DNA of 64,000 nt from Selaginella moellendorffii (GCF_000143415.4 NW_003314277.1:1873185-1937184), one strand, 5' to 3'. Positions 7,955-46,357 are shown, counted from the first letter of the stretch. Translations and numbers: made by a program. The notes: a model not told the origin generated them from the letters alone.

Positions 7955-8525
7955 CTTAGAGGAACAAAACATGGTCTTCTAGCCAAATTGAGGAAGCAAA
8001 TGAAATTTTTTACTTTCTTCAAGCAAGTTCTTCAACTTAGCATTAATTGATTAAGTCAATAAAGAAGAGATTGAGTTTTTGAAGGGTAAATTTGTCCATG
8101 GTGATAGAAAAGAAAATAATGTTATTGTCCAATGTACATGGTTCAAAAGCTATGTTCCATTAGGTGTCTACATAAAAACAATATAAATTCTATTGAAAAG
8201 TGGACAGCTTTTTAGTCCCAAAATATAATTGTTACATTGATATTAATGAAATGAAATAAGTTATCAGTGGTTTAGTAAAATTTATGCAGCCTGTACATAA
8301 ATGTTTAATGGAACATAACCTTGCAACTACACACATTAAATAATAAATTTGTTCTTTTTTCTATCACCATAATTAAATTTACTTTTCAAAAACTCAATCT
8401 CTTCTCTATTGAGATCCACAATCACCTTAAGTAATTACTACTGGGTCAAAAAAATTACTTGAAAAAGGCAAAAAATCTCATTTGCCCTTTAGTTTAGCTA
8501 AAAGATCATGTTTTACTCCTTCTAA
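7955..8525. mobile_element. Fold-back / MITE-like element with ~230-bp imperfect inverted arms
   Basis: ggaacaaaacatggtcttctagccaaattg...gagattgagtttttgaag...tatgttccatta pairs with taatggaacata...ttcaaaaactcaatctc...agctaaaagatcatgttttactcc. Confidence 0.65.
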
Positions 8526-8584
8526 AAACAAGCATTAATTCTTATAACTTTTGCCATTGTGTCAATGAGATATGTGGAAAAGGT

Positions 8585-9005
8585 TTTTTATATTAACCCT
8601 AAACTCTAAACATTTGGTTTTATAATTGATTTTTGCAATTAAATTAAAAGAAATTGTAGTGTTTGATTCTATTAGAGAGAGAAATTTTGACTTTCTTTAT
8701 TGCTTCCAAAAACCCTATAGATTTAAATTTTAAATATGTTTGAGTATTTTAAGATATTCTACCAATTTTATATTTATGATTTATAAACTTTTAGAATATA
8801 TTCTTTTTTATCCTAATAGTTTATATGTATTCTAACTTTTGATCTAAACACAATTTTACAATTTTAATGATTTTTATAAAAAAATAAAAAATATATTTTA
8901 CATTACCTTATAAATAATTTTTTATAAACACAGTTAAATATAAAAGAATAAAGTCCAACTATAAAAGCACTCATATTGTAAAAAAATTATTTAGTGATTA
9001 AATGG
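8585..9005. repeat. AT-rich dispersed repeat, copy 2
   Basis: Collinear with 4241-4715. Confidence 0.75.
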
Positions 9006-10039
9006 TAACATTATTTAGAAGCATTCATAATAACTATTATTTAGAGAGATGCAATTACATAATTATTCAAAAGTTTCATTATCGGGTATAAAATAAAGTC
9101 ACTAATTAATATAAGTTTAGAATTGTCATAAGATTATTTTTGGCATATGATAATTGAAGATATAAGTGTCTCTGTATACCTAGCAATTTAATTTAGTTTT
9201 ATTTATTTAATAATAATTAATTAAATTAGCATAATTATTAATAAAAACCACGTATTAATGTTACTGCATGCAATTTGCAGTAAATTACTAATAAAAGAAA
9301 TAATAGCTATTTATTTTAAAATTTAATTCTTCAGATCTTATTAAATATACACTTAAAAATATAAAATATTTAATTTTCCAATGGTAAAAATCAGAAATTC
9401 ACATTACTATTAAAAATTTCTGTCCACTAAATATAGAGAATGAAACTAGTTATTAAAAAATAACTAAAATTAAAATATAAAATTAAGTAAGGCATTCTAC
9501 TATATATTTTATTATATTTCTACTAACATAGAGCAATTTTATAGTTAATATAAAGAGAAAAAAATTATAGTATGTCATATAAGTACTTTTGTATATAATT
9601 TAAATATTTTATCACATGGCCTGCCTCGAATTTGGATATAGCATTGGAGTAATTGCAATAATTGAAGTTATTAATCCCAAACTAAAGGAAATAAAATAAT
9701 TAGGATTTAGCTTAATAATTCTCAAGTTTACTCCCATATCTTAAAAAGTTATAGTTTCAGGAAAATTCAATAAATATAAAAATTATTGAATTCTATATGG
9801 AAGGTTGTGCTGTAAATTTGCAATAAGAACTATTTAATAAATCAAAAGTTTTATGAGTCATTATCCACTTATCTGATTTTTATAATGAATTAAAAATATT
9901 TAAGATAACTATTATAATTATAATTGTAAACCTGGGGATTCAGTTAGAACAACATAAGAGTTTCAGCGTGAAGTTTTTCCCACTAATTTCTTTGCTAGAT
10001 TTTTTAGGTACCGCTAAGGAGTATACTAAATCATCCTCC

Positions 10040-33097: not shown

Positions 33098-33913
33098 CTA
33101 TACCATCTCCTTGATCGTCGACTGTAGCTGATACAGATCAAACTCTTCCTGCACCAGCTCCTTGATCGTCGACTGGAGCTGATACAGATCAAACGTGAGT
33201 GGGATGTCATGGCAGTCTGGAACATCGCTGGAAAGCATGCTGAACGGGAACCACACCAAGAAATCCTCCTTTGTTTCCAAAGTGCAAACTCCAGGGCTAA
33301 AATCTATAATCTGTGTACCTTTGCCAGCTTCCTCCTGCACCCACAACAGTTGCAGGCTGCTGCTGCTAGTGCTGAGGGTGGCGTACGAGATTTGTATCCC
33401 AATTGCGAGCTTACAGCCCGAGCGAACCCAGTGGTTAAGTTCCCTGACGAGTACCTCAAAAGGCTCGTTCTTGTAGCCCACTTCAAGGACTACTCGAGGG
33501 AATGGATGCTTCTGCGAGGCCGTGGAGAAAGAGGCGTCTGGCTCCTTGCTCCCGTTACCAAGCGCAAACCTCGATGATCCCAGGACCCGGACGAAGGAGC
33601 GGATGTCCAGCTCGGGGCTCGTGAGCATCAAGTGCCTCTCCACTTGCCGGCATAACTTGTGGAAGAACCACTGCTTCGTCTCGTCGTGGACGTTACTGGG
33701 ATCGCCAAATATGTAGACACTGCCAACGCCGGAGCCCGCTTCTCTCTCGAGGAAGGCCAGCCTCCAGCAGTCTTCATTGTTGGAACTCCATTTCTCAAAG
33801 CTAGAGTAGAACACATCGTCTGCCACTAGAAAAGGGCCCTTCCCTGTGCCTGAGCACTCTTTGTACAAACTCACCGCCTTCTCCAGGCCACGATCCAGTC
33901 TCTCCTTCGACAT
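33098..33913 (-). CDS. Intronless Uma2-like PD-(D/E)xK restriction-endonuclease-fold protein, 271 aa
   Basis: KEPDASF...FPRVVLEVGYKNEPFEVL...HW motif. The C-terminal FDLYQLQSTIKE is tandemly duplicated. A telo-box (aaaaccctaa) lies immediately upstream of the ATG. Confidence 0.7.
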   Translation of the reverse strand: MSKERLDRGLEKAVSLYKECSGTGKGPFLVADDVFYSSFEKWSSNNEDCWRLAFLEREAGSGVGSVYIFGDPSNVHDETKQWFFHKLCRQVERHLMLTSPELDIRSFVRVLGSSRFALGNGSKEPDASFSTASQKHPFPRVVLEVGYKNEPFEVLVRELNHWVRSGCKLAIGIQISYATLSTSSSSLQLLWVQEEAGKGTQIIDFSPGVCTLETKEDFLVWFPFSMLSSDVPDCHDIPLTFDLYQLQSTIKELVQEEFDLYQLQSTIKEMV

Positions 33914-34177
33914 TGGATTAGGGTTTTCAGCTGGTACGGTATTTAAAGGAATAAATCAACCTTTTGAAGTTTTCAAGCTTTTAACCCAAAATTAGTAGTG
34001 CGAGAAATAAATGTAAAACGAACTTTAAACTAATCTTAATTTATTTTAATAAACTCTTTAGTTTCTCCATGGATGGTATTTAGTTTCTCACCAAAATACC
34101 AAACATTAGATGCTTACATTCTGCTATAAAATGGGTTGCTCCTAGAGTGTTAGCAACCAGCAGTTTCGAGCTAGCTA

Positions 34178-35133
34178 ATGGCTCATACCAGTGCTCTAAT
34201 CTTCCTCACTTCTTTCATTGCTTTCGCTGCAAGCGTTGCAGTGGCACAAACTCCCACCACTCCTCCTCCAGGCACTCCACCCCCTCCAGCCCCTCCTCCT
34301 CCAGGCACTCCAGCCACTCCAGCCACTCCAGGATGCTTCCCAGGTAGGGTTCATGTGAAATCACGCTTTTTTCTTCATACAATTTTCAAGCTATTATAGG
34401 AGATGCAACTGTTCAGATGTATAATGGAGAAATTAAGTTCGTGAGGGAGCTTAATGTTGGAGACAAGGTTGAATACTTTCACATAAATCTTGTCCAAGTA
34501 TAACTTCTCCGCAGGTTGCAGTGGGGAAGAATATCTATTCAGATGTGTATGCATTCGGCCACAAGGATGCTGATGCCATGTCCAAGTTTTTCCAAGTGCA
34601 CAGCGCTTCAAACATGTTGGAACTCACTGCAGGCCACTTTGTTCCCGTTGCTGTCAATGGGAAGCTCGTGTACAAGAGAGCCGAGGACCTCAAGGTTGGA
34701 GATTCCCTGTGGGAATCATCTCAAATCACTGGTAAGGAAAGCAAAAAGCATATATATTGGTGGGATGTTTCGAATTTGACGATTCTGTGCTACTTTTCCA
34801 GAAATACAAAAGGTTGAGAAGGTAGGCCTCTACAACCCGCTCACTCTCTCCGGCAGCATCATGGTGAACAATGTTCTAGCATCGACTCACAGCGAGTGGT
34901 TCTTGGACTCCATATTTGATGCTGTCGGCGCAACCGAGTACCTGCCATACGCATACCAGGCCGTGCTTGCTCCAGTTCGCGCCATCTACAACATCGTCGG
35001 CAAGGAAATCTACGCAAAGGGCTATGCTGCCATCGATTCCTTCACCAACATTGCTGACTTTGGAAGGAAGTATGGAGGAAGCGTTGCTCTCACCTTTGGA
35101 GTTGCTGGTCTTGTGCTGGCCTCCAAGGTGTAA
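34178..35133 (+). CDS. Secreted Pro-rich peptide fused to a Hedgehog-type Hint/Hog autoprocessing domain, 260 aa (exons 34178-34343, 34400-34467, 34515-34731, 34802-35133)
   Basis: Splicing gives 783 nt in frame: G|CFPGDATVQM..ELNVGDKV, YSDVYAFGH, LELTAGH (TxxH), AEDLKVGD, GLYNPLTLSGSIMVNNVLAS, then LAPVR. Confidence 0.9.
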
Positions 35134-36188
35134 ACAACTTTGGCAAGAATAAAAATTTTACATATTAACGTACAGTGAACAGACAAGAATAAAAACAACA
35201 AAGGCAAGGGTACCTCTCACACCTGAAGCAAGAATCGTACCAAATGCCCACTACACGGCATTTGTTTTGTTTTGCTAAAACACTAAAGCTGGCATTTTAT
35301 GGAAATGCCCGGGGTATCACATTGAATAATTTTAATGATTAAGGAAATTATTATAAATTACAATGGAGGCATGAGACCACAAACTTCCTGCCCTAACCTC
35401 ACTCCCACCCACTCAGTCTTCTCTTGACTTCCAGCTCCCGAAATTCCTCCCAAATTAATAGACTTTTGGTGGCAAGTAGTATCTAAAGTATGTTCCTTGC
35501 CACTTGAAGCTATTGCCACCAATGGTATCTATTAGTTTTTAAAATGCATGTTTTAATTTGCCTCCACCTCTGGCACATACAGGATTGAGACTTATATATT
35601 TGAAAACAATACAGTTACATGGTACCAATAAAAAAGAAGAGCAAAGTTATTGATGATCTATTGCTCAAGACGACATCTAAAAATGGACCCTTTTGACTAT
35701 GTGTCTGTGAAGATGTAATTCTGTTGACTAAATCAGTCCTTGAGCTCCTTGAGCTCTTCTGAGCATTTCCAAACTGTGTGCACCAATTCGAGACAATCAA
35801 TCCATGGAATTCTTTCTAATCGCTTAAAAACAGAGATTTTCAAGGCAATTTTGGTAACATATCATTAGCCAGTTCTAAGTATTTAATTATTAATATTAAA
35901 TTTTATTACAAACTGATTTTTTAAATTCCAAAAAACTGTCTGCTGCTTGTTAAAGCAAACCCAAAATTACAATTCTCTTTTCTTTTCTTTTTTCTGGTTT
36001 ATGAGATGGTAGTGGGTATACCTAGAAAATGCTTGGATATTCTATTATCTAATGATTGTTATTCATTTAGATTAATTTTATATTTATAATTTATAATCTT
36101 TCCTAAACACTTTCTAGTATATTCTTTTTTATTCTAATGGTTGATATGCAATAAGATTAATTTGTGTTTGAAAATTATAAACATGTAA

Positions 36189-42685: not shown

Positions 42686-44094
42686 ATTCAGAGTCAACAT
42701 TCAGCCCTTTGAACTTCATCCAGTTTCGAAAGTGGTAGGGGGTTTGAGGTCATCAGGGTCCGCGCAGGACATCGGACCTGACACTTCAAAAAACTTGGAG
42801 TAATAATTCTAACATGCTCAAGAGTTAATTGTAAAGTCAAGTTGCTTGTCATAAAATGTAGCCTGAAAAGTAAGCATAGCCTTAAGTTCCCTAGCATCAT
42901 GTTTCCTGTCAGCTCCCAACTTCAATTTGAACTCAATGTTGTCCAAGATTCTTGGATGCTTCTTCCCCATTGGGTGGTACACTCAAATTTTAACAAGTGA
43001 CTCAGGGCTGATATTCCACAAATAGTACTGGAATTTTGGTTCATGTTATTCACCTTGCAGCCACCACTCAAAATCTCTATTACATAGAACCATAAGCACG
43101 TGTTAATTCTTTGTTTGCTGTATCTGTCAGGTTGATGATCACAATTTTGGTTTGATTCTTTTTTGTTGTGGTGAAGTCTTGCAAGATTTTGGAGATTCGT
43201 TTTGAACAGAAAGTATCTCCTCACATTGTCAATTATGTGCTATCGAAAAATGATGCATTGGAATTTACTTCTCATGGCAACTGCAAGTAAGAATTCTCAA
43301 AAACATTTCTCATTAATGGGTGAAATTCTTTCGAGTAATTTGTTTTTTTTCTCGACTATCAAAATTTTTAGTATCCCATGCATGTTTTTAAAACACAAGA
43401 TGTGTCACCTCAATTATATGGTGGCAACTGATTTTCTTACTTTCTTTGACTTGCTTCTTTAGTTTCAAAAATCTATATGTTCAGTTCAAAGGTTAAAAAT
43501 CTCTTTACAGTTTTTGAAAAAAAAGAAGCTACAATATATTTTTTATGTTTCAATATTTTTATTTATTAAAATATCTATAATGCTTAAATGTAATTTGTTG
43601 GGTGTAGACAGCTATAAGAACTTGAAGGTCCTATAAAACCATTGATATAATAGTTGACAACTATAATAAAAACCTAAACCTATAAATCAAGAAAATATGG
43701 AACTAAAGCTAAGGACAGACAATATTGGCCATTGTACTCCATGAAACACTGTATAGCAAATGATAAACTTATTTCTAAGTCTTCCCTCTGTTTAACTTCC
43801 AAGATCAATATTAACTCAGACTTATAACTATTAATCAAATATAAAAAGTTTGGTTTTTGACTTCGTTTAGGCACATTAGAGGTCAGATTCATCATATCCT
43901 CTCCACAAAGGAAAAAAAAACTTTGAGAATAAGAAAACACTTTAACAATAACAATGAAATAAAAAATTTCAATAGCACTCACAAACAAAAGAATCATTGA
44001 AAATTGATTCAATTCAAAATATTAGAAAAATTTTCTATGTGTTGCATGTAGTAATGTTTGGTTTGTTTAATAGTAGTTTATTTTTACTTATGAA

Positions 44095-44240
44095 TCTCAT
44101 TGATCAAATAAAAGTTTATAATATAGAAAAACAAGATAAATCTTATTTCATATCAACCATTAGATGGTAGAATAAAAAAGAATATACTAGAAAGTGTTTA
44201 AGAAAGTTTATAAATTATAAACATGTTTATAAATAATAAA
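44095..44240 (-). repeat. Uninterrupted inverted copy of the AT-rich repeat that flanks the Gypsy element
   Basis: Its reverse complement matches 36080-36180 joined to 41320-41345. Confidence 0.6.
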
Positions 44241-45905
44241 AATATTTATAAATTATAAATACAAGATAAATATAAATGAATAGCAACCATTAAAGGAAAC
44301 ATAAGAATACTTAAAACTAAAAATCAATAATTCTGCATAAGATATAATGCAAAATTCTCAGTGAGACATACACTTTTAAAATTCAAATCAATTTGAAGAG
44401 TATAATAAACACTGAACTGATTTAAGAATAAAACTTATAAGATTCAGAAGTAATTAACATGTCAAAAGAAGAAAATACTATAGATGAGAGGGGAAATAAA
44501 GAAAAAATGTTATGATGTAAAAAAGGGTAAGAAAAAGGGCAGTATTTCAAATTTTAAAGATTACCTATCTTATGAAATATCCAACTCATTTTCATGTTAT
44601 CTGTAAAGTTATTCTTGAAATAATGAAATTCCTCATCATTAGAAATCCCCTTAAGCTTATAAACATCATCCTGACTCGATACTTAATCATCCTCCAAGAA
44701 CCAAATTATATAATCCATAACTCTTTAATTGAAATTATGCTCTATAACAATAAAGATAGCAACACACCAAGAATATTAAAAATTTATAATTTAAATGCCA
44801 TAAAAAATCAATAACAACACATCAAAGGGTGTAACACCACCAAAATCAAGCCCAATACCAGTAAAGCTTAAACTGGAGAAAAAAAAGTAGGAGGAATAAT
44901 GTTGTTGGATCAAAACAATAACACATCATCAATAACCTTCAATAATACACTCTTCAATCTAGAATAAGATGGCATGATAAAAAGAACAAATGTAATGAAA
45001 GCTTGAAAAGAAGACAAAAATAGAGAAGTTGTAAATGACTGGTGGTCTCACTCCATTTGAATTAGACTATTATTAGTGCATTAGCTCTATAATATCAATT
45101 ATGTAGACAATATGGAAAAGCTAAATTTCATGGAAAGAACGGGAGAATAAATAAAGTAGAAAATTCTTGAATACAGCCAAGGATCTTGTCAAAAAGTTTT
45201 ATCCCTCACTTCTACTTATATGGGAATATAAAAATATTAAAAGGTTTAGAAAGAGTAATTTTATAATCATTGTTGGGAGTATCAATCAGCATATCAATTT
45301 TATATCACATGTTGCCACCTTTAACTAAATAATTGTATTGATCCTTAACTTTTCTAAACTAATCTTCCTCCATAACTATTGATACAATTACAGTCTATAC
45401 ATATGTATATATAGACTTTACAGATATAATTTTCTAAGATAATAATTTTTTTAATTATTACTTCAAATGTTTTATTATACCAAATAAAACAATTAATTCA
45501 TTATAATACAATATCACTTTATAAGTTATATTTATTCTACCAAAGAACCAAAAATGTTCTTGTTGTAATCTTAGTAAGTAGCACAACTCGTTTAATCATT
45601 TGTAGGTTTATATAGTTTATATAAAATAATAAATTATTATTTTTAAGATAGTGTATGTAAATTATTATATGTAATATAGTGTATGTAAAAAATGGATAAT
45701 AAAAATATTTATGGCCTAAAATAGTAATGAAAAACATATTAAAAAATCATATATTATAGCTTAAATTTGTTTTCTTTGTAGTTATGGTTAAGAATTTAAC
45801 TGATATAGTACTATAATTTAAAGTAAAACTTTAAAATATTTTTAGAAAATATATATTAATATAATTTTATCTCAAAGAATTTTTTATAATGTGATTAATA
45901 AACTA

Positions 45906-46257
45906 ATATATGTATATATGTATATATGTATATATATATATGTATATATGTATATGTATATATGTATATATGTATATATATATATATGTATATATGTATA
46001 TGTATATATGTATATATATATATGTATATATGTATATATATATATGTATATATGTATATGTATATATGTATATATATATATGTATATGTATATATATATA
46101 TATGTATATATGTATATATATGTATATGTATATATGTATATATATGTATATGTATATATATGTATATGTATATGTATATATATGTATATGTATATATATG
46201 TATATATATGTATATGTATATATATGTATATATATGTATATATATGTATATGTATAT
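45906..46257. repeat. (TA)n/(TATG) compound microsatellite
   Basis: Direct inspection. Confidence 0.98.
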
Positions 46258-46357
46258 NNNNNNNNNNNNNNNNNNNNNNNNNNNNNNNNNNNNNNNNNNN
46301 NNNNNNNNNNNNNNNNNNNNNNNNNNNNNNNNNNNNNNNNNNNNNNNNNNNNNNNNN
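46258..46357. other. Assembly gap of 100 N
   Basis: N run next to the microsatellite. True length unknown. Confidence 0.99.

What the first reader, a model, noticed from the sequence alone, without database searches (positions are those of the whole stretch)
34178..35133. Hedgehog-type autoprocessing gene whose only cargo is a 29-aa Pro-rich peptide: candidate self-lipidating plant glycopeptide system
Seen: four exons splice in frame to a 260-aa protein with a ~23-aa signal peptide, then QTPTTPPPGTPPPPAPPPPGTPATPATPG (15 of 29 residues Pro), then G|CFPG (Cys codon 34334-34336). A full Hint domain follows with TAGH and GLYNPLTLSGSIMVNNVLAS, then an LAPVR-containing amphipathic segment and a hydrophobic tail. 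Established: in Hedgehog, Hint cleaves at Gly|Cys via a thioester, and the sterol-recognition region (LAPMR-like helix) attaches cholesterol to the released N-fragment. Hog genes have been reported in seed-free plants, but I know of no functional work on them. Inference: the released product looks like an arabinogalactan/hydroxyproline-rich peptide (N-terminal Gln; TP, AP and PPPP motifs). It could gain a membrane or wall anchor by Hint-catalysed esterification to a phytosterol or other nucleophile instead of a GPI anchor.
Basis: partly seen in the sequence, partly recalled or inferred. Interest (0 to 1): 0.92.

Follow-up and report, generated by a model that had tools for sequence, protein, structure and literature searches.

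The report
Spikemoss Hog gene with proline-rich cargo
This is a real, expressed spikemoss (Selaginella moellendorffii) gene that joins a 29-residue proline-rich peptide to a Hedgehog-type self-cleaving domain; the family was published in 2008 and the gene is annotated, so only the cargo and its possible lipid anchoring are new and untested.

Summary
Four exons (34178-35133, +) with GT..AG introns give a 260-aa protein. It is identical to RefSeq XP_024531687.1 of Selaginella moellendorffii, auto-named "warthog protein 6". All three splice joints occur in cDNA-like contigs. The protein has a signal peptide, a 29-aa Pro/Thr-rich stretch (15 Pro), then G52|C53-FPG. A Hedgehog-type Hint domain follows (Pfam 95.6 bits; best fold match Drosophila Hh-C, TM 0.82). 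Behind it lie a strongly conserved helical region and a C-terminal membrane helix.

The catalytic residues are kept. Hedgehog's general base Asp46 is an invariant His here, a swap known from the D46H structure 6TYY. The second Cys (C143) is absent. The region behind Hint shows no detectable homology to Hedgehog's sterol-recognition region.

The Pro-rich cargo occurs in only four recent S. moellendorffii paralogues. They are nested among paralogues with 4-6-residue cargo, and the cargo lies on an unstable tandem DNA array (29-69 aa). The Hog part is under purifying selection (dN/dS 0.13-0.23).

Plant Hog genes were published in 2008, and this scan has already met sister genes in this genome. 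Self-cleavage is likely. Lipid attachment and glycosylation of the cargo are plausible but untested.

The parts
34178..34343 (+). Exon 1: start codon, signal peptide, Pro-rich cargo, Gly52-Cys53-Phe-Pro and the first base of the Gly56 codon
   Evidence: Translation and GT donor at 34344. The joint 34343|34400 occurs in an X1 contig. Identical to the RefSeq product P0167.
34178..34246 (+). Signal peptide, residues 1-23 (MAHTSALIFLTSFIAFAASVAVA), with likely cleavage after A-V-A
   Evidence: Hydropathy reaches 2.27 and the AF2 model has a helix at 2-23. The A-x-A rule is applied by eye, so the cleavage site is an inference.
34247..34333 (+). Cargo, residues 24-52: 15 Pro, 7 Thr, 3 Ala, 3 Gly, 1 Gln. 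It has seven [AST]P dipeptides and three runs of PPP or PPPP, and contains no Cys, Tyr or Ser. The coding DNA is an imperfect tandem array (34250-34329, period 33, 2.4 copies, 85% matches).
   Evidence: The stretch is disordered in the model (pLDDT 53-60). Its length in paralogues is 29, 47, 49 and 69 aa.
34334..34336 (+). Cys53 codon (TGC), the Hint residue 1 nucleophile; the predicted scissile bond is Gly52|Cys53
   Evidence: Aligns with Cys1 of Drosophila Hh-C and with GCFPG of human SHH. Cys is present in 30 of 30 aligned homologues. It is the only Cys in the protein.
34344..34399 (+). Intron 1 (56 nt, GT..AG)
34400..34467 (+). Exon 2 (68 nt): the first strands of the Hint domain
   Evidence: The exon has the same length in paralogue loci L001, L002 and L003.
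34468..34514 (+). Intron 2 (47 nt, GT..AG)
34515..34731 (+). Exon 3 (217 nt): the Hint core. It holds His94 (34560-34562, the position of Hedgehog general base Asp46), Thr116 (34626-34628) and His119 (34635-34637), the last two forming the TxxH motif.
   Evidence: Alignments to 6TYY, 1AT0 and SHH. Column counts: His94 32/32, Thr or Ser at 116 in 33/34, His119 33/34.
34732..34801 (+). Intron 3 (70 nt, GT..AG)
   Evidence: X1 record 3.
34802..35133 (+). Exon 4 (332 nt, including the TAA stop). It encodes the end of Hint (motif J, GLYNP...VLAS, 34825-34884), Thr179 in place of Hedgehog Cys143 (34885-34887), and the clade motif HSxWFLD (34888-34908). It also encodes the conserved helical adduct-recognition-like region (residues 181-233, 34891-35049, with LAPVR at 34966-34980) and the C-terminal membrane helix (residues 241-258, 35071-35124), followed by Ser-Lys-Val.
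   Evidence: Pfam gives 33.8 bits on this exon alone. The invariant residues S178, H180, S181, D186, Y202 and P208 are present in 41/41 sequences. The model has helices at 186-259 with pLDDT 83-96.

Best explanation
This is an intact, expressed member of the plant Hog family (signal peptide, small cargo, Hedgehog-type Hint domain, adduct-recognition region, C-terminal membrane helix). In a young Selaginella-specific subclade, the very short cargo has grown by repeat expansion into a Pro/Thr-rich peptide that resembles a hydroxyproline-rich glycoprotein.

Likely mechanism:
1. The precursor enters the ER. The signal peptide is removed after Ala23, and the C-terminal helix holds the protein in the membrane with Hint in the lumen.
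2. Cys53, helped by Thr116 and His119, converts the Gly52-Cys53 peptide bond into a thioester.
3. His94, which sits where Hedgehog has its general base Asp46, activates a hydroxyl nucleophile. This is most likely a membrane sterol or another lipid alcohol, presented by the conserved helices 186-232. The 29-residue peptide is released with an ester-linked lipid at Gly52.
4. Its prolines could then be hydroxylated and O-glycosylated in the Golgi. The product would be a lipid-anchored glycopeptide at the cell surface, in effect an arabinogalactan-peptide whose GPI signal is replaced by a Hog domain.

Shown here: the gene model, its transcription, the Hint fold and residues, the conservation pattern and purifying selection. 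Inferred: signal-peptide cleavage, topology, self-cleavage, the adduct and glycosylation.
For: Gene and transcript: (all three joints in cDNA-like contigs; identical to the RefSeq model).

Hint identity: Pfam 95.6 bits. A family profile scores E 1.5e-26 against Drosophila Hh-C. The AF2 model has pLDDT 85.7, and its best PDB matches are 6TYY and 1AT0 with TM 0.82 and 0.80.

Catalytic set is conserved: Cys53 30/30, His94 32/32, Thr/Ser116 33/34, His119 33/34. His at the general-base site is compatible with transfer chemistry. 6TYY is the D46H Hedgehog autoprocessing mutant, and its paper is titled 'General base swap preserves activity...' (reference 36 in PMC13738340).

The segment behind Hint is the best-conserved part of the family. 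All seven invariant columns lie in residues 168-208. It is followed by a hydrophobic helix that has basic tails in homologues. This fits a membrane-embedded co-substrate.

Selection: dN/dS is 0.13-0.23 on the Hog part between paralogues, and exon structure is conserved.

Cargo: 25 of 29 residues are Pro, Ala or Thr, with seven [AST]P dipeptides. By established rules these are the motifs for Pro hydroxylation and arabinogalactan or arabinoside addition.

Burglin 2008 proposed a sterol-like adduct for ancestral Hog proteins.
Against: There is no biochemical evidence for any non-animal Hog. A 2026 paper still calls them 'of unknown function'.

The region behind Hint is not detectably homologous to Hedgehog's sterol-recognition region, so the nucleophile may not be a sterol, or may be water.

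Hedgehog's second catalytic Cys (C143) is Thr here and is variable across the family.

The Pro-rich cargo is confined to four near-identical S. moellendorffii genes among 94 family sequences examined. It is nested within 4-6-residue-cargo genes, and it lies on an unstable tandem array with lengths of 29-69 aa. It could therefore be a neutral expansion.

Expression is patchy. There were essentially no reads in two deep 2026 RNA runs.
Confidence: 0.5

Rival explanations
1. The cargo has no function of its own. The functional entity is the membrane-anchored Hog domain, or its reaction with a tiny leader, as in the sister genes with 4-6-residue cargo. The Pro-rich stretch is then a tolerated slippage expansion of a CCN-rich tandem repeat between the signal-peptide site and Cys53.
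For: The four Pro-rich genes form one young clade (support 99/97, branch lengths 0.004-0.03) nested among the short-cargo genes TNTTG|C and TNTNNS|C. The signal peptides are alignable, so the Pro-rich part looks inserted. The DNA is an imperfect tandem array. Two copies whose exons 2-4 are 99% identical differ by 57 nt in this array. No Pro-rich cargo was seen in other taxa. Burglin made the same slippage argument for nematode T-hog.
Against: All four copies keep a clean P/T/A/G composition with [AST]P motifs over 29-69 residues, and at least two of them are expressed. A released 29-69-residue Pro-rich peptide in the secretory pathway would be a P4H/glycosyltransferase substrate whether or not it was selected for. 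The conserved catalytic Cys implies that whatever precedes it is processed.
Confidence: 0.22
2. The Hog domain cleaves itself, but the thioester is resolved by water or a small soluble nucleophile. The domain then acts as a self-removing, membrane-tethered pro-domain that releases a free secreted Pro-rich peptide (a HypSys- or CLE-like hydroxyproline glycopeptide, or a wall peptide) with no lipid.
For: The catalytic residues for thioester formation are conserved. There is no detectable homology to the Hedgehog sterol-recognition region. Cys143 is lacking. For nematode Hog proteins the adduct is likewise unknown (PMC2362128).
Against: His at the general-base position is invariant (32/32), and the helical region plus membrane helix are conserved more strongly than the Hint core. 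Hydrolysis alone would not need either.
Confidence: 0.2
3. The protein is not processed. It stays a type I membrane protein whose N-terminal Pro-rich, O-glycosylated stalk projects from a catalytically idle Hint domain.
For: A Pro-rich stalk plus a C-terminal membrane helix is a common surface-protein layout.
Against: The stalk would carry nothing at its tip. Cys1, TxxH and His94 are invariant across roughly 30 homologues from green algae to ferns, which argues for retained chemistry.
Confidence: 0.05
4. The stretch is a pseudogene or an annotation artefact.
For: The family has decayed copies elsewhere in this genome (earlier scan notes; fragment models P0163 and P0164).
Against: The frame is intact, the introns are canonical, spliced transcripts exist, and dN/dS is 0.13-0.23.
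Confidence: 0.02

Closest known systems
Plant Hog proteins of Burglin 2008 (pSm Hog of Selaginella moellendorffii, pPp Hog of Physcomitrella, pSl Hog of S. lepidophylla; PMC2362128)
   Same: Same family and same species. All have a signal peptide, X|CFPGDA, Hint motifs A, B and J with the motif-J Cys replaced, an LAPxR motif (motif K), and a hydrophobic C-terminus. The published pSm Hog is a paralogue of this gene.
   Different: The published pSm Hog has the 4-residue cargo TNTS|C. pPp and pSl Hog have a ~230-residue Cys-containing N-domain. The Pro-rich cargo subclade is not described in that paper.
Drosophila and vertebrate Hedgehog C-terminal autoprocessing domain (Hh-C; PDB 1AT0, 6TYY)
   Same: Hint fold (TM 0.80-0.82, 28-29% identity). 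GCFPG at the junction is identical to human SHH. The TxxH motif is kept, and a titratable residue sits at the general-base site.
   Different: There is no Hedge signalling domain. The general base is His rather than Asp (natural here, engineered in 6TYY). Cys143 is Thr. The region behind Hint is not alignable to the sterol-recognition region, and it ends in a true membrane helix.
Nematode T-hog, Short-hog and Hog-only proteins, and choanoflagellate Hoglet
   Same: These are Hog domains behind very short or low-complexity cargo: a Thr-rich stretch attributed to polymerase slippage, and a 200-residue Thr stretch in Hoglet.
   Different: They belong to other lineages and their cargo is Thr-rich, not Pro-rich. 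The RefSeq name 'warthog protein 6' reflects only Hog-domain similarity, because there is no Wart domain here.
GPI-anchored arabinogalactan peptides and classical AGPs of land plants
   Same: A signal peptide followed by a short backbone dominated by Pro, Ala and Thr with AP and TP dipeptides, then a C-terminal module that is removed in the ER and could be replaced by a lipid (functional analogy, inference).
   Different: The C-terminal module is a 208-residue Hog domain, not a GPI signal. The runs of PPPP are extensin-like, but the Ser-Pro4 and Tyr cross-link motifs are missing. No glycosylation data exist.
Inteins, BIL and Vint domains
   Same: Shared Hint fold (Foldseek E 5e-7 to 1e-4).
   Different: These are weaker matches than Hh-C. 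Here there is no C-terminal His-Asn with a +1 nucleophile and no C-extein. This is Hedgehog-type cleavage and transfer, not protein splicing.

Membership tests
Hog proteins (Hedgehog-type Hint + ARR/SRR) | Hint module detected above the curated threshold | tested here: met
   PF01079 scores 95.6 bits against a cut-off of 29.7, over residues 50-182 = profile positions 10-162. The exon pieces hit collinear parts of the profile.
Hog proteins (Hedgehog-type Hint + ARR/SRR) | Hint fold closest to Hedgehog C-domain rather than to inteins | tested here: met
   Foldseek ranks 6TYY (E 2e-11, TM 0.82) and 1AT0 (TM 0.80) first. BIL2, inteins and Vint follow at E 5e-7 or worse. The model has pLDDT >90 in Hint.
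Hog proteins (Hedgehog-type Hint + ARR/SRR) | Nucleophilic Cys at Hint position 1 after a small residue, plus the block-B Thr-x-x-His motif | tested here: met
   G52|C53, T116 and H119 are present, with column counts of 30/30, 33/34 and 33/34.
Hog proteins (Hedgehog-type Hint + ARR/SRR) | General base at the Asp46 position for the transfer step | tested here: inconclusive
   The position holds His94, not Asp, and His is invariant in 32/32 family members. The D46H Hedgehog mutant keeps the fold (6TYY) and is reported as active (paper title cited in PMC13738340; the paper itself is not held).
Hog proteins (Hedgehog-type Hint + ARR/SRR) | Second conserved Cys of motif J (Hedgehog C143) | tested here: not met
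   The position is Thr179, and the column varies among A, T, S, V and C. Burglin 2008 reported the same for moss and red-algal Hog proteins.
Hog proteins (Hedgehog-type Hint + ARR/SRR) | Sterol/adduct-recognition region behind Hint that is homologous to Hedgehog's SRR | tested here: not met
   A conserved ~75-residue helical region exists. However, Pfam positions 163-213 are unmatched, and the family profile stops at motif J on full-length fly Hh and human SHH. Only the short LAPxR motif resembles motif K. It is therefore an ARR, not a demonstrable SRR.
Hog proteins (Hedgehog-type Hint + ARR/SRR) | Autocleavage and adduct transfer | not testable with these tools
   This needs biochemistry.
Bona fide Hedgehog | N-terminal Hedge signalling domain | tested here: not met
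   Only PF01079 is found, and the cargo is 29 low-complexity residues.
Nematode Warthog (the RefSeq name of this protein) | Wart domain (Cys-containing N-terminal domain) | tested here: not met
   The cargo has no Cys and only 29 residues. The name comes from Hog-domain similarity.
Arabinogalactan peptide / HRGP | Signal peptide plus a backbone biased to Pro/Ala/Ser/Thr with AP, SP or TP dipeptides | tested here: met
   25 of 29 residues are Pro, Ala or Thr, with seven [AST]P dipeptides. The signal peptide is inferred from sequence features.
Arabinogalactan peptide / HRGP | C-terminal GPI-anchor signal directly after the backbone | tested here: not met
   The backbone is followed by a 208-residue Hog domain. 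The terminal hydrophobic stretch belongs to that domain, and in homologues it carries basic cytosolic tails typical of a membrane helix.
Arabinogalactan peptide / HRGP | Hydroxyproline and O-linked arabinogalactan or arabinosides | not testable with these tools
   This needs glycoproteomics, Yariv binding or antibody tests.
Inteins | C-terminal His-Asn plus a +1 Cys/Ser/Thr and a C-extein to be ligated | tested here: not met
   Hint ends in ...VLASTHS with no His-Asn. What follows is the family's own conserved helical region.

The most novel reading that the evidence does not exclude
Seed-free plants have a ribosomally encoded, GPI-independent way to lipid-anchor wall or surface glycopeptides. 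In this reading a Hog domain with a natural His general base esterifies a hydroxyproline-rich peptide of 29-69 residues to a phytosterol or another membrane alcohol. In the sister genes the cargo is a 4-6-residue peptide that carries an N-glycosylation sequon. The products would be 'protein-born glycolipids', a class of molecule not known in plants. This would also be the first demonstrated sterol- or lipid-transfer by a Hog domain outside animals.
Probability: 0.22. Interest if true: 0.8.

Novelty: new member of a known kind. Interest (0 to 1): 0.42.

Why it matters
Covalent cholesterol attachment by Hedgehog is regarded as unique to animal morphogens, and what the many non-animal Hog proteins do has been open since 2008. 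This Selaginella subfamily offers very small, easily synthesised and mass-spectrometry-friendly cargos behind a complete catalytic module. That makes it a practical system for asking which nucleophile a plant Hog domain uses. If the adduct is a phytosterol or another lipid, it would reveal a second lipid-anchoring route for plant surface glycopeptides, besides GPI. It would also show that the natural His general base is an ancestral alternative to Hedgehog's Asp. If cleavage is only hydrolytic, or the cargo is a neutral repeat expansion, the gene is just one more member of a known family of unknown function.

Tried and rejected
- The spliced protein has no window reference, so I did not type it. 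I searched the exons apart, then found the identical database protein P0167 and used that.
- Raw 2026 RNA runs X21 and X22 gave two reads (of a paralogue) and none. This is no evidence of silence, because only 12% of each run was read. The spliced evidence comes from the contigs of X1, whose RNA label is a guess. Intron-less contigs at depth ~200, next to unspliced DNA in X17, make cDNA the only reasonable reading.
- In the X1 contig the Pro-rich part differs from the window (net -9 nt). I could not tell a strain variant from an assembly collapse in the repeat.
- The look-up of encoding contigs had no record for P0001 or P0152. I reached the P0001 locus through P0165.
- The D46H paper (PMC7106946) is not held. 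I cite only its title and the PDB entry.
- Four literature searches for functional work on plant Hog proteins, or for a Hint-arabinogalactan link, found none.
- Rejected readings: pseudogene; intein, BIL or Vint; true Hedgehog; Warthog; and extensin (no Ser-Pro4, no Tyr).
- GPI signal for the tail: possible in form for the Selaginella copies, but homologues carry basic cytosolic tails.
- ARR-SRR homology was tested and not found.

Full report
**1. Observation**

Reading 33700-35700 and splicing the four proposed exons gives 783 nt and a 260-aa protein with no internal stop. The exons are 34178-34343, 34400-34467, 34515-34731 and 34802-35133, and every intron is GT..AG with lengths 56, 47 and 70 nt.

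- a hydrophobic N-terminus of about 23 residues;
- the 29-residue stretch QTPTT...ATPG with 15 Pro;
- G52|C53-FPG, with the Cys codon at 34334-34336;
- TAGH, GLYNPLTLSGSIMVNNVLAS, LAPVR and a hydrophobic tail.

The protein has a single cysteine, Cys53.

**2. It is a real, annotated, transcribed gene of Selaginella moellendorffii**

A search of 1.84 billion representative proteins with the exon-4 piece found 466 relatives. The cluster of the best hit contains a 260-aa member, P0167 = RefSeq XP_024531687.1. It is auto-named "warthog protein 6 [Selaginella moellendorffii]" and is letter-for-letter identical to my spliced product.

Contigs of run X1 join 34343|34400, 34467|34515 and 34731|34802 at k-mer depth of about 200. 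Run X17 holds the same stretch unspliced. So all three introns are removed in vivo exactly as proposed.

A second, about 95% similar transcript was also seen. Its exon-4 start reads (E)-I-S, as in paralogue P0151. Two deep 2026 RNA runs had almost nothing, so expression is condition-dependent.

**3. The domain is a Hedgehog-type Hint domain**

- Pfam Hint PF01079 matches residues 50-182 (E 4e-27, 95.6 bits, cut-off 29.7). The separate exon pieces hit collinear parts of the profile.
- phmmer aligns Cys53 with Cys1 of Drosophila Hh-C, and GCFPG with the same five residues of human SHH.
- An AlphaFold2 model built on a 41-sequence alignment (A1) has mean pLDDT 85.7. Hint (53-180) is above 90, the Pro-rich part is disordered, and five helices span 186-259.
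- Foldseek ranks the Drosophila Hh-C structures first: 6TYY (E 2e-11, TM 0.82) and 1AT0 (TM 0.80). BIL2, inteins and Vint come behind.
- A profile of A1 scores E 1.5e-26 on 6TYY.

**4. Catalytic inventory**

| Residue here | Hedgehog equivalent | Conservation in A1 |
|---|---|---|
| Cys53 | Cys1 | 30/30 |
| Thr116 | Thr69 | Thr or Ser in 33/34 |
| His119 | His72 | 33/34 |
| His94 | Asp46 (general base) | His in 32/32 |
| Thr179 | Cys143 | variable (A/T/S/V/C) |

(Counts.)

Asp46 is the general base that activates cholesterol (PMC9163320; PMC13738340). The best PDB match, 6TYY, is the engineered D46H mutant. [quoted passage not shown] So this clade carries, naturally, a swap that is known to be tolerated.

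Hedgehog's second Cys (C143) was recently proposed to carry a branched intermediate (PMC12054796, listed). Its replacement here matches what Burglin noted in 2008.

**5. The region behind Hint**

This is the most conserved part of the family. All seven invariant columns (G168, S178, H180, S181, D186, Y202, P208) and most near-invariant ones (W183, Q203, R210, G217) lie here. They form the motifs AS-x-HS-x-WFLD and LP-x-x-YQ-x-x-L-x-P-x-R-x-x-Y.

A hydrophobic helix follows. In homologues it is followed in turn by basic residues, the signature of a membrane anchor with a short cytosolic tail.

This region is not detectably homologous to Hedgehog's sterol-recognition region. Pfam profile positions 163-213 are unmatched. 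The A1 profile stops at motif J on full-length fly Hh and human SHH. The LAPVR/LAPMR likeness is therefore a motif-level resemblance (Burglin's motif K). "Adduct-recognition region" is the safer name.

**6. The cargo in its family context**

S. moellendorffii has a family of these short Hog genes:
- four with Pro-rich cargo of 29, 47, 49 and 69 residues (P0167, P0001, P0151, P0152);
- several with almost no cargo (TNTTG|C, TNTNNS|C, TNTS|C);
- others with small 4-6-Cys peptides (P0157, P0004);
- one with the long N-domain shared with mosses (P0015).

A maximum-likelihood tree of the Hog parts puts all ten short Selaginella genes in one clade (100/100). The four Pro-rich genes form a young subclade (99/97, branch lengths 0.004-0.03) nested among the short-cargo genes.

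The signal peptides align, so the Pro-rich part looks like an insertion between the signal-peptide site and Cys53. Its DNA is an imperfect tandem array (period 33, 2.4 copies).

The copy at locus L003 (P0001) is 99% identical in exons 2-4 and 96-98% identical in the introns, but has 57 extra bases in the array.

Among 94 family sequences with an aligned Cys1, only these Selaginella genes have Pro-rich cargo.

The Hog part is under purifying selection: dN/dS is 0.13-0.23, with dS up to 0.41. Exon structure is conserved.

Named family members come from a chlorophyte alga, liverworts, mosses, lycophytes and a fern. No seed plant appeared among the names seen.

**7. What it most likely does**

The conserved chemistry argues that the Gly52|Cys53 bond is converted to a thioester and cleaved. 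Three features together are hard to explain by hydrolysis alone: the invariant His at the general-base site, the strongly conserved helical region, and the membrane helix. They fit transfer of the cargo to a membrane-resident hydroxyl compound, with a sterol as the obvious candidate.

The released 29-residue peptide has the composition and [AST]P and PPPP motifs that, by the established Hyp-contiguity rules for plant HRGPs, attract prolyl hydroxylation and O-glycosylation.

It is not shown, however. The recent repeat-expansion origin of the cargo gives real weight to the rival reading that the Pro-rich stretch is a tolerated by-product. I put about 0.5 on cleavage with adduct transfer producing a functional Pro-rich product, about 0.2 each on the "neutral cargo" and "hydrolysis only" readings, and little on the rest.

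**8. Relation to what is known**

Burglin 2008 (PMC2362128) described Hog genes in Physcomitrella, S. moellendorffii and S. lepidophylla. [quoted passage not shown]

Its pSm Hog, assembled from ESTs, is the TNTS|C short-cargo paralogue, not this gene.

Very short or low-complexity cargos have precedents: T-hog, Short-hog, Hog-only, and Hoglet's Thr stretch.

A 2026 paper still calls non-Hedgehog Hog proteins "of unknown function". Four searches found no functional work on plant Hogs and no Hint-arabinogalactan link.

This scan has already noted and followed up sister genes in the same genome. These include one first-reader note on an AGP-like cargo 440 kb away. The earlier conclusions agree with mine: a known family, annotated genes, and only the cargo and the untested function are new.

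**9. Verdict**

The gene is a new member (a Pro-rich-cargo subclade) of a known kind. Interest is moderate. The gene itself is not new, but the subfamily is a convenient entry point to the long-open question of what non-animal Hog domains attach to their cargo.

Noticed in passing
Paralogues P0153, P0154/P0155, P0160 (loci L001 and others): The 4-6-residue cargos of the sister genes (TNTTG|C, TNTNNS|C, TNTS|C) each contain an N-x-S/T sequon just before the cleavage Cys. If it is used, even the mini-cargos would be glycopeptides. The sequon may, however, lie too close to the signal-peptide site to be glycosylated.
   Followed up: no
L003:5001-6014 versus window 34178-35133: The P0001 copy is 612/617 identical in exons 2-4 and 167/173 identical in introns, yet its flanks are only 82-91% identical and are rearranged. 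For example, the homologue of the window's upstream ORF 33098-33913 lies downstream in L003. This could be a divergent haplotype, a recent segmental duplicate or gene conversion; it is undecided.
   Followed up: partly
window 34174-34341 (run X1, record 1): The spliced X1 contig matches exons 2-3 exactly. In the Pro-rich array it differs by 7 substitutions and several indels (net -9 nt). This is either a strain length variant or an assembly collapse in the repeat.
   Followed up: no
P0021 (Logan assembly, 309 aa); P0005 (Ceratodon purpureus, 429 aa): Other family members carry recognisable cargo. P0021 has a hevein-type chitin-binding domain (PF00187, E 6e-9) directly before S|CFPG. P0005, from a moss, has a 160-residue Cys-rich STIG1/CPL1-like region.
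   Followed up: partly
Alignment A1, residues 177-186 and 199-217 of P0167: The clade-specific invariant motifs AS-x-HS-x-WFLD and LP-x-x-YQ-x-x-L-x-P-x-R-x-x-Y-x-x-x-G are more conserved than the Hint core. His180, Ser181 and Asp186 are invariant in 41/41 sequences and have no counterpart in Hedgehog. They may be extra catalytic or adduct-binding residues.
   Followed up: partly
window 33098-33913 (-): A 271-aa single-exon ORF lies head-to-head with the Hog gene, with start codons 264 bp apart. It has no Pfam match, and a 91% identical copy lies next to the P0001 locus.
   Followed up: partly
window 34125-34130 and 35148-35153: A TATAAA lies 48 bp upstream of the ATG, and an AATAAA lies 15 bp after the stop codon. 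These are candidate core promoter and poly(A) signals, judged from sequence only.
   Followed up: no
window 46258-46357; 8001-10000; 44001-46000: There is a 100-N assembly gap, and two AT-rich stretches of about 22% GC in an otherwise 44% GC window.
   Followed up: no
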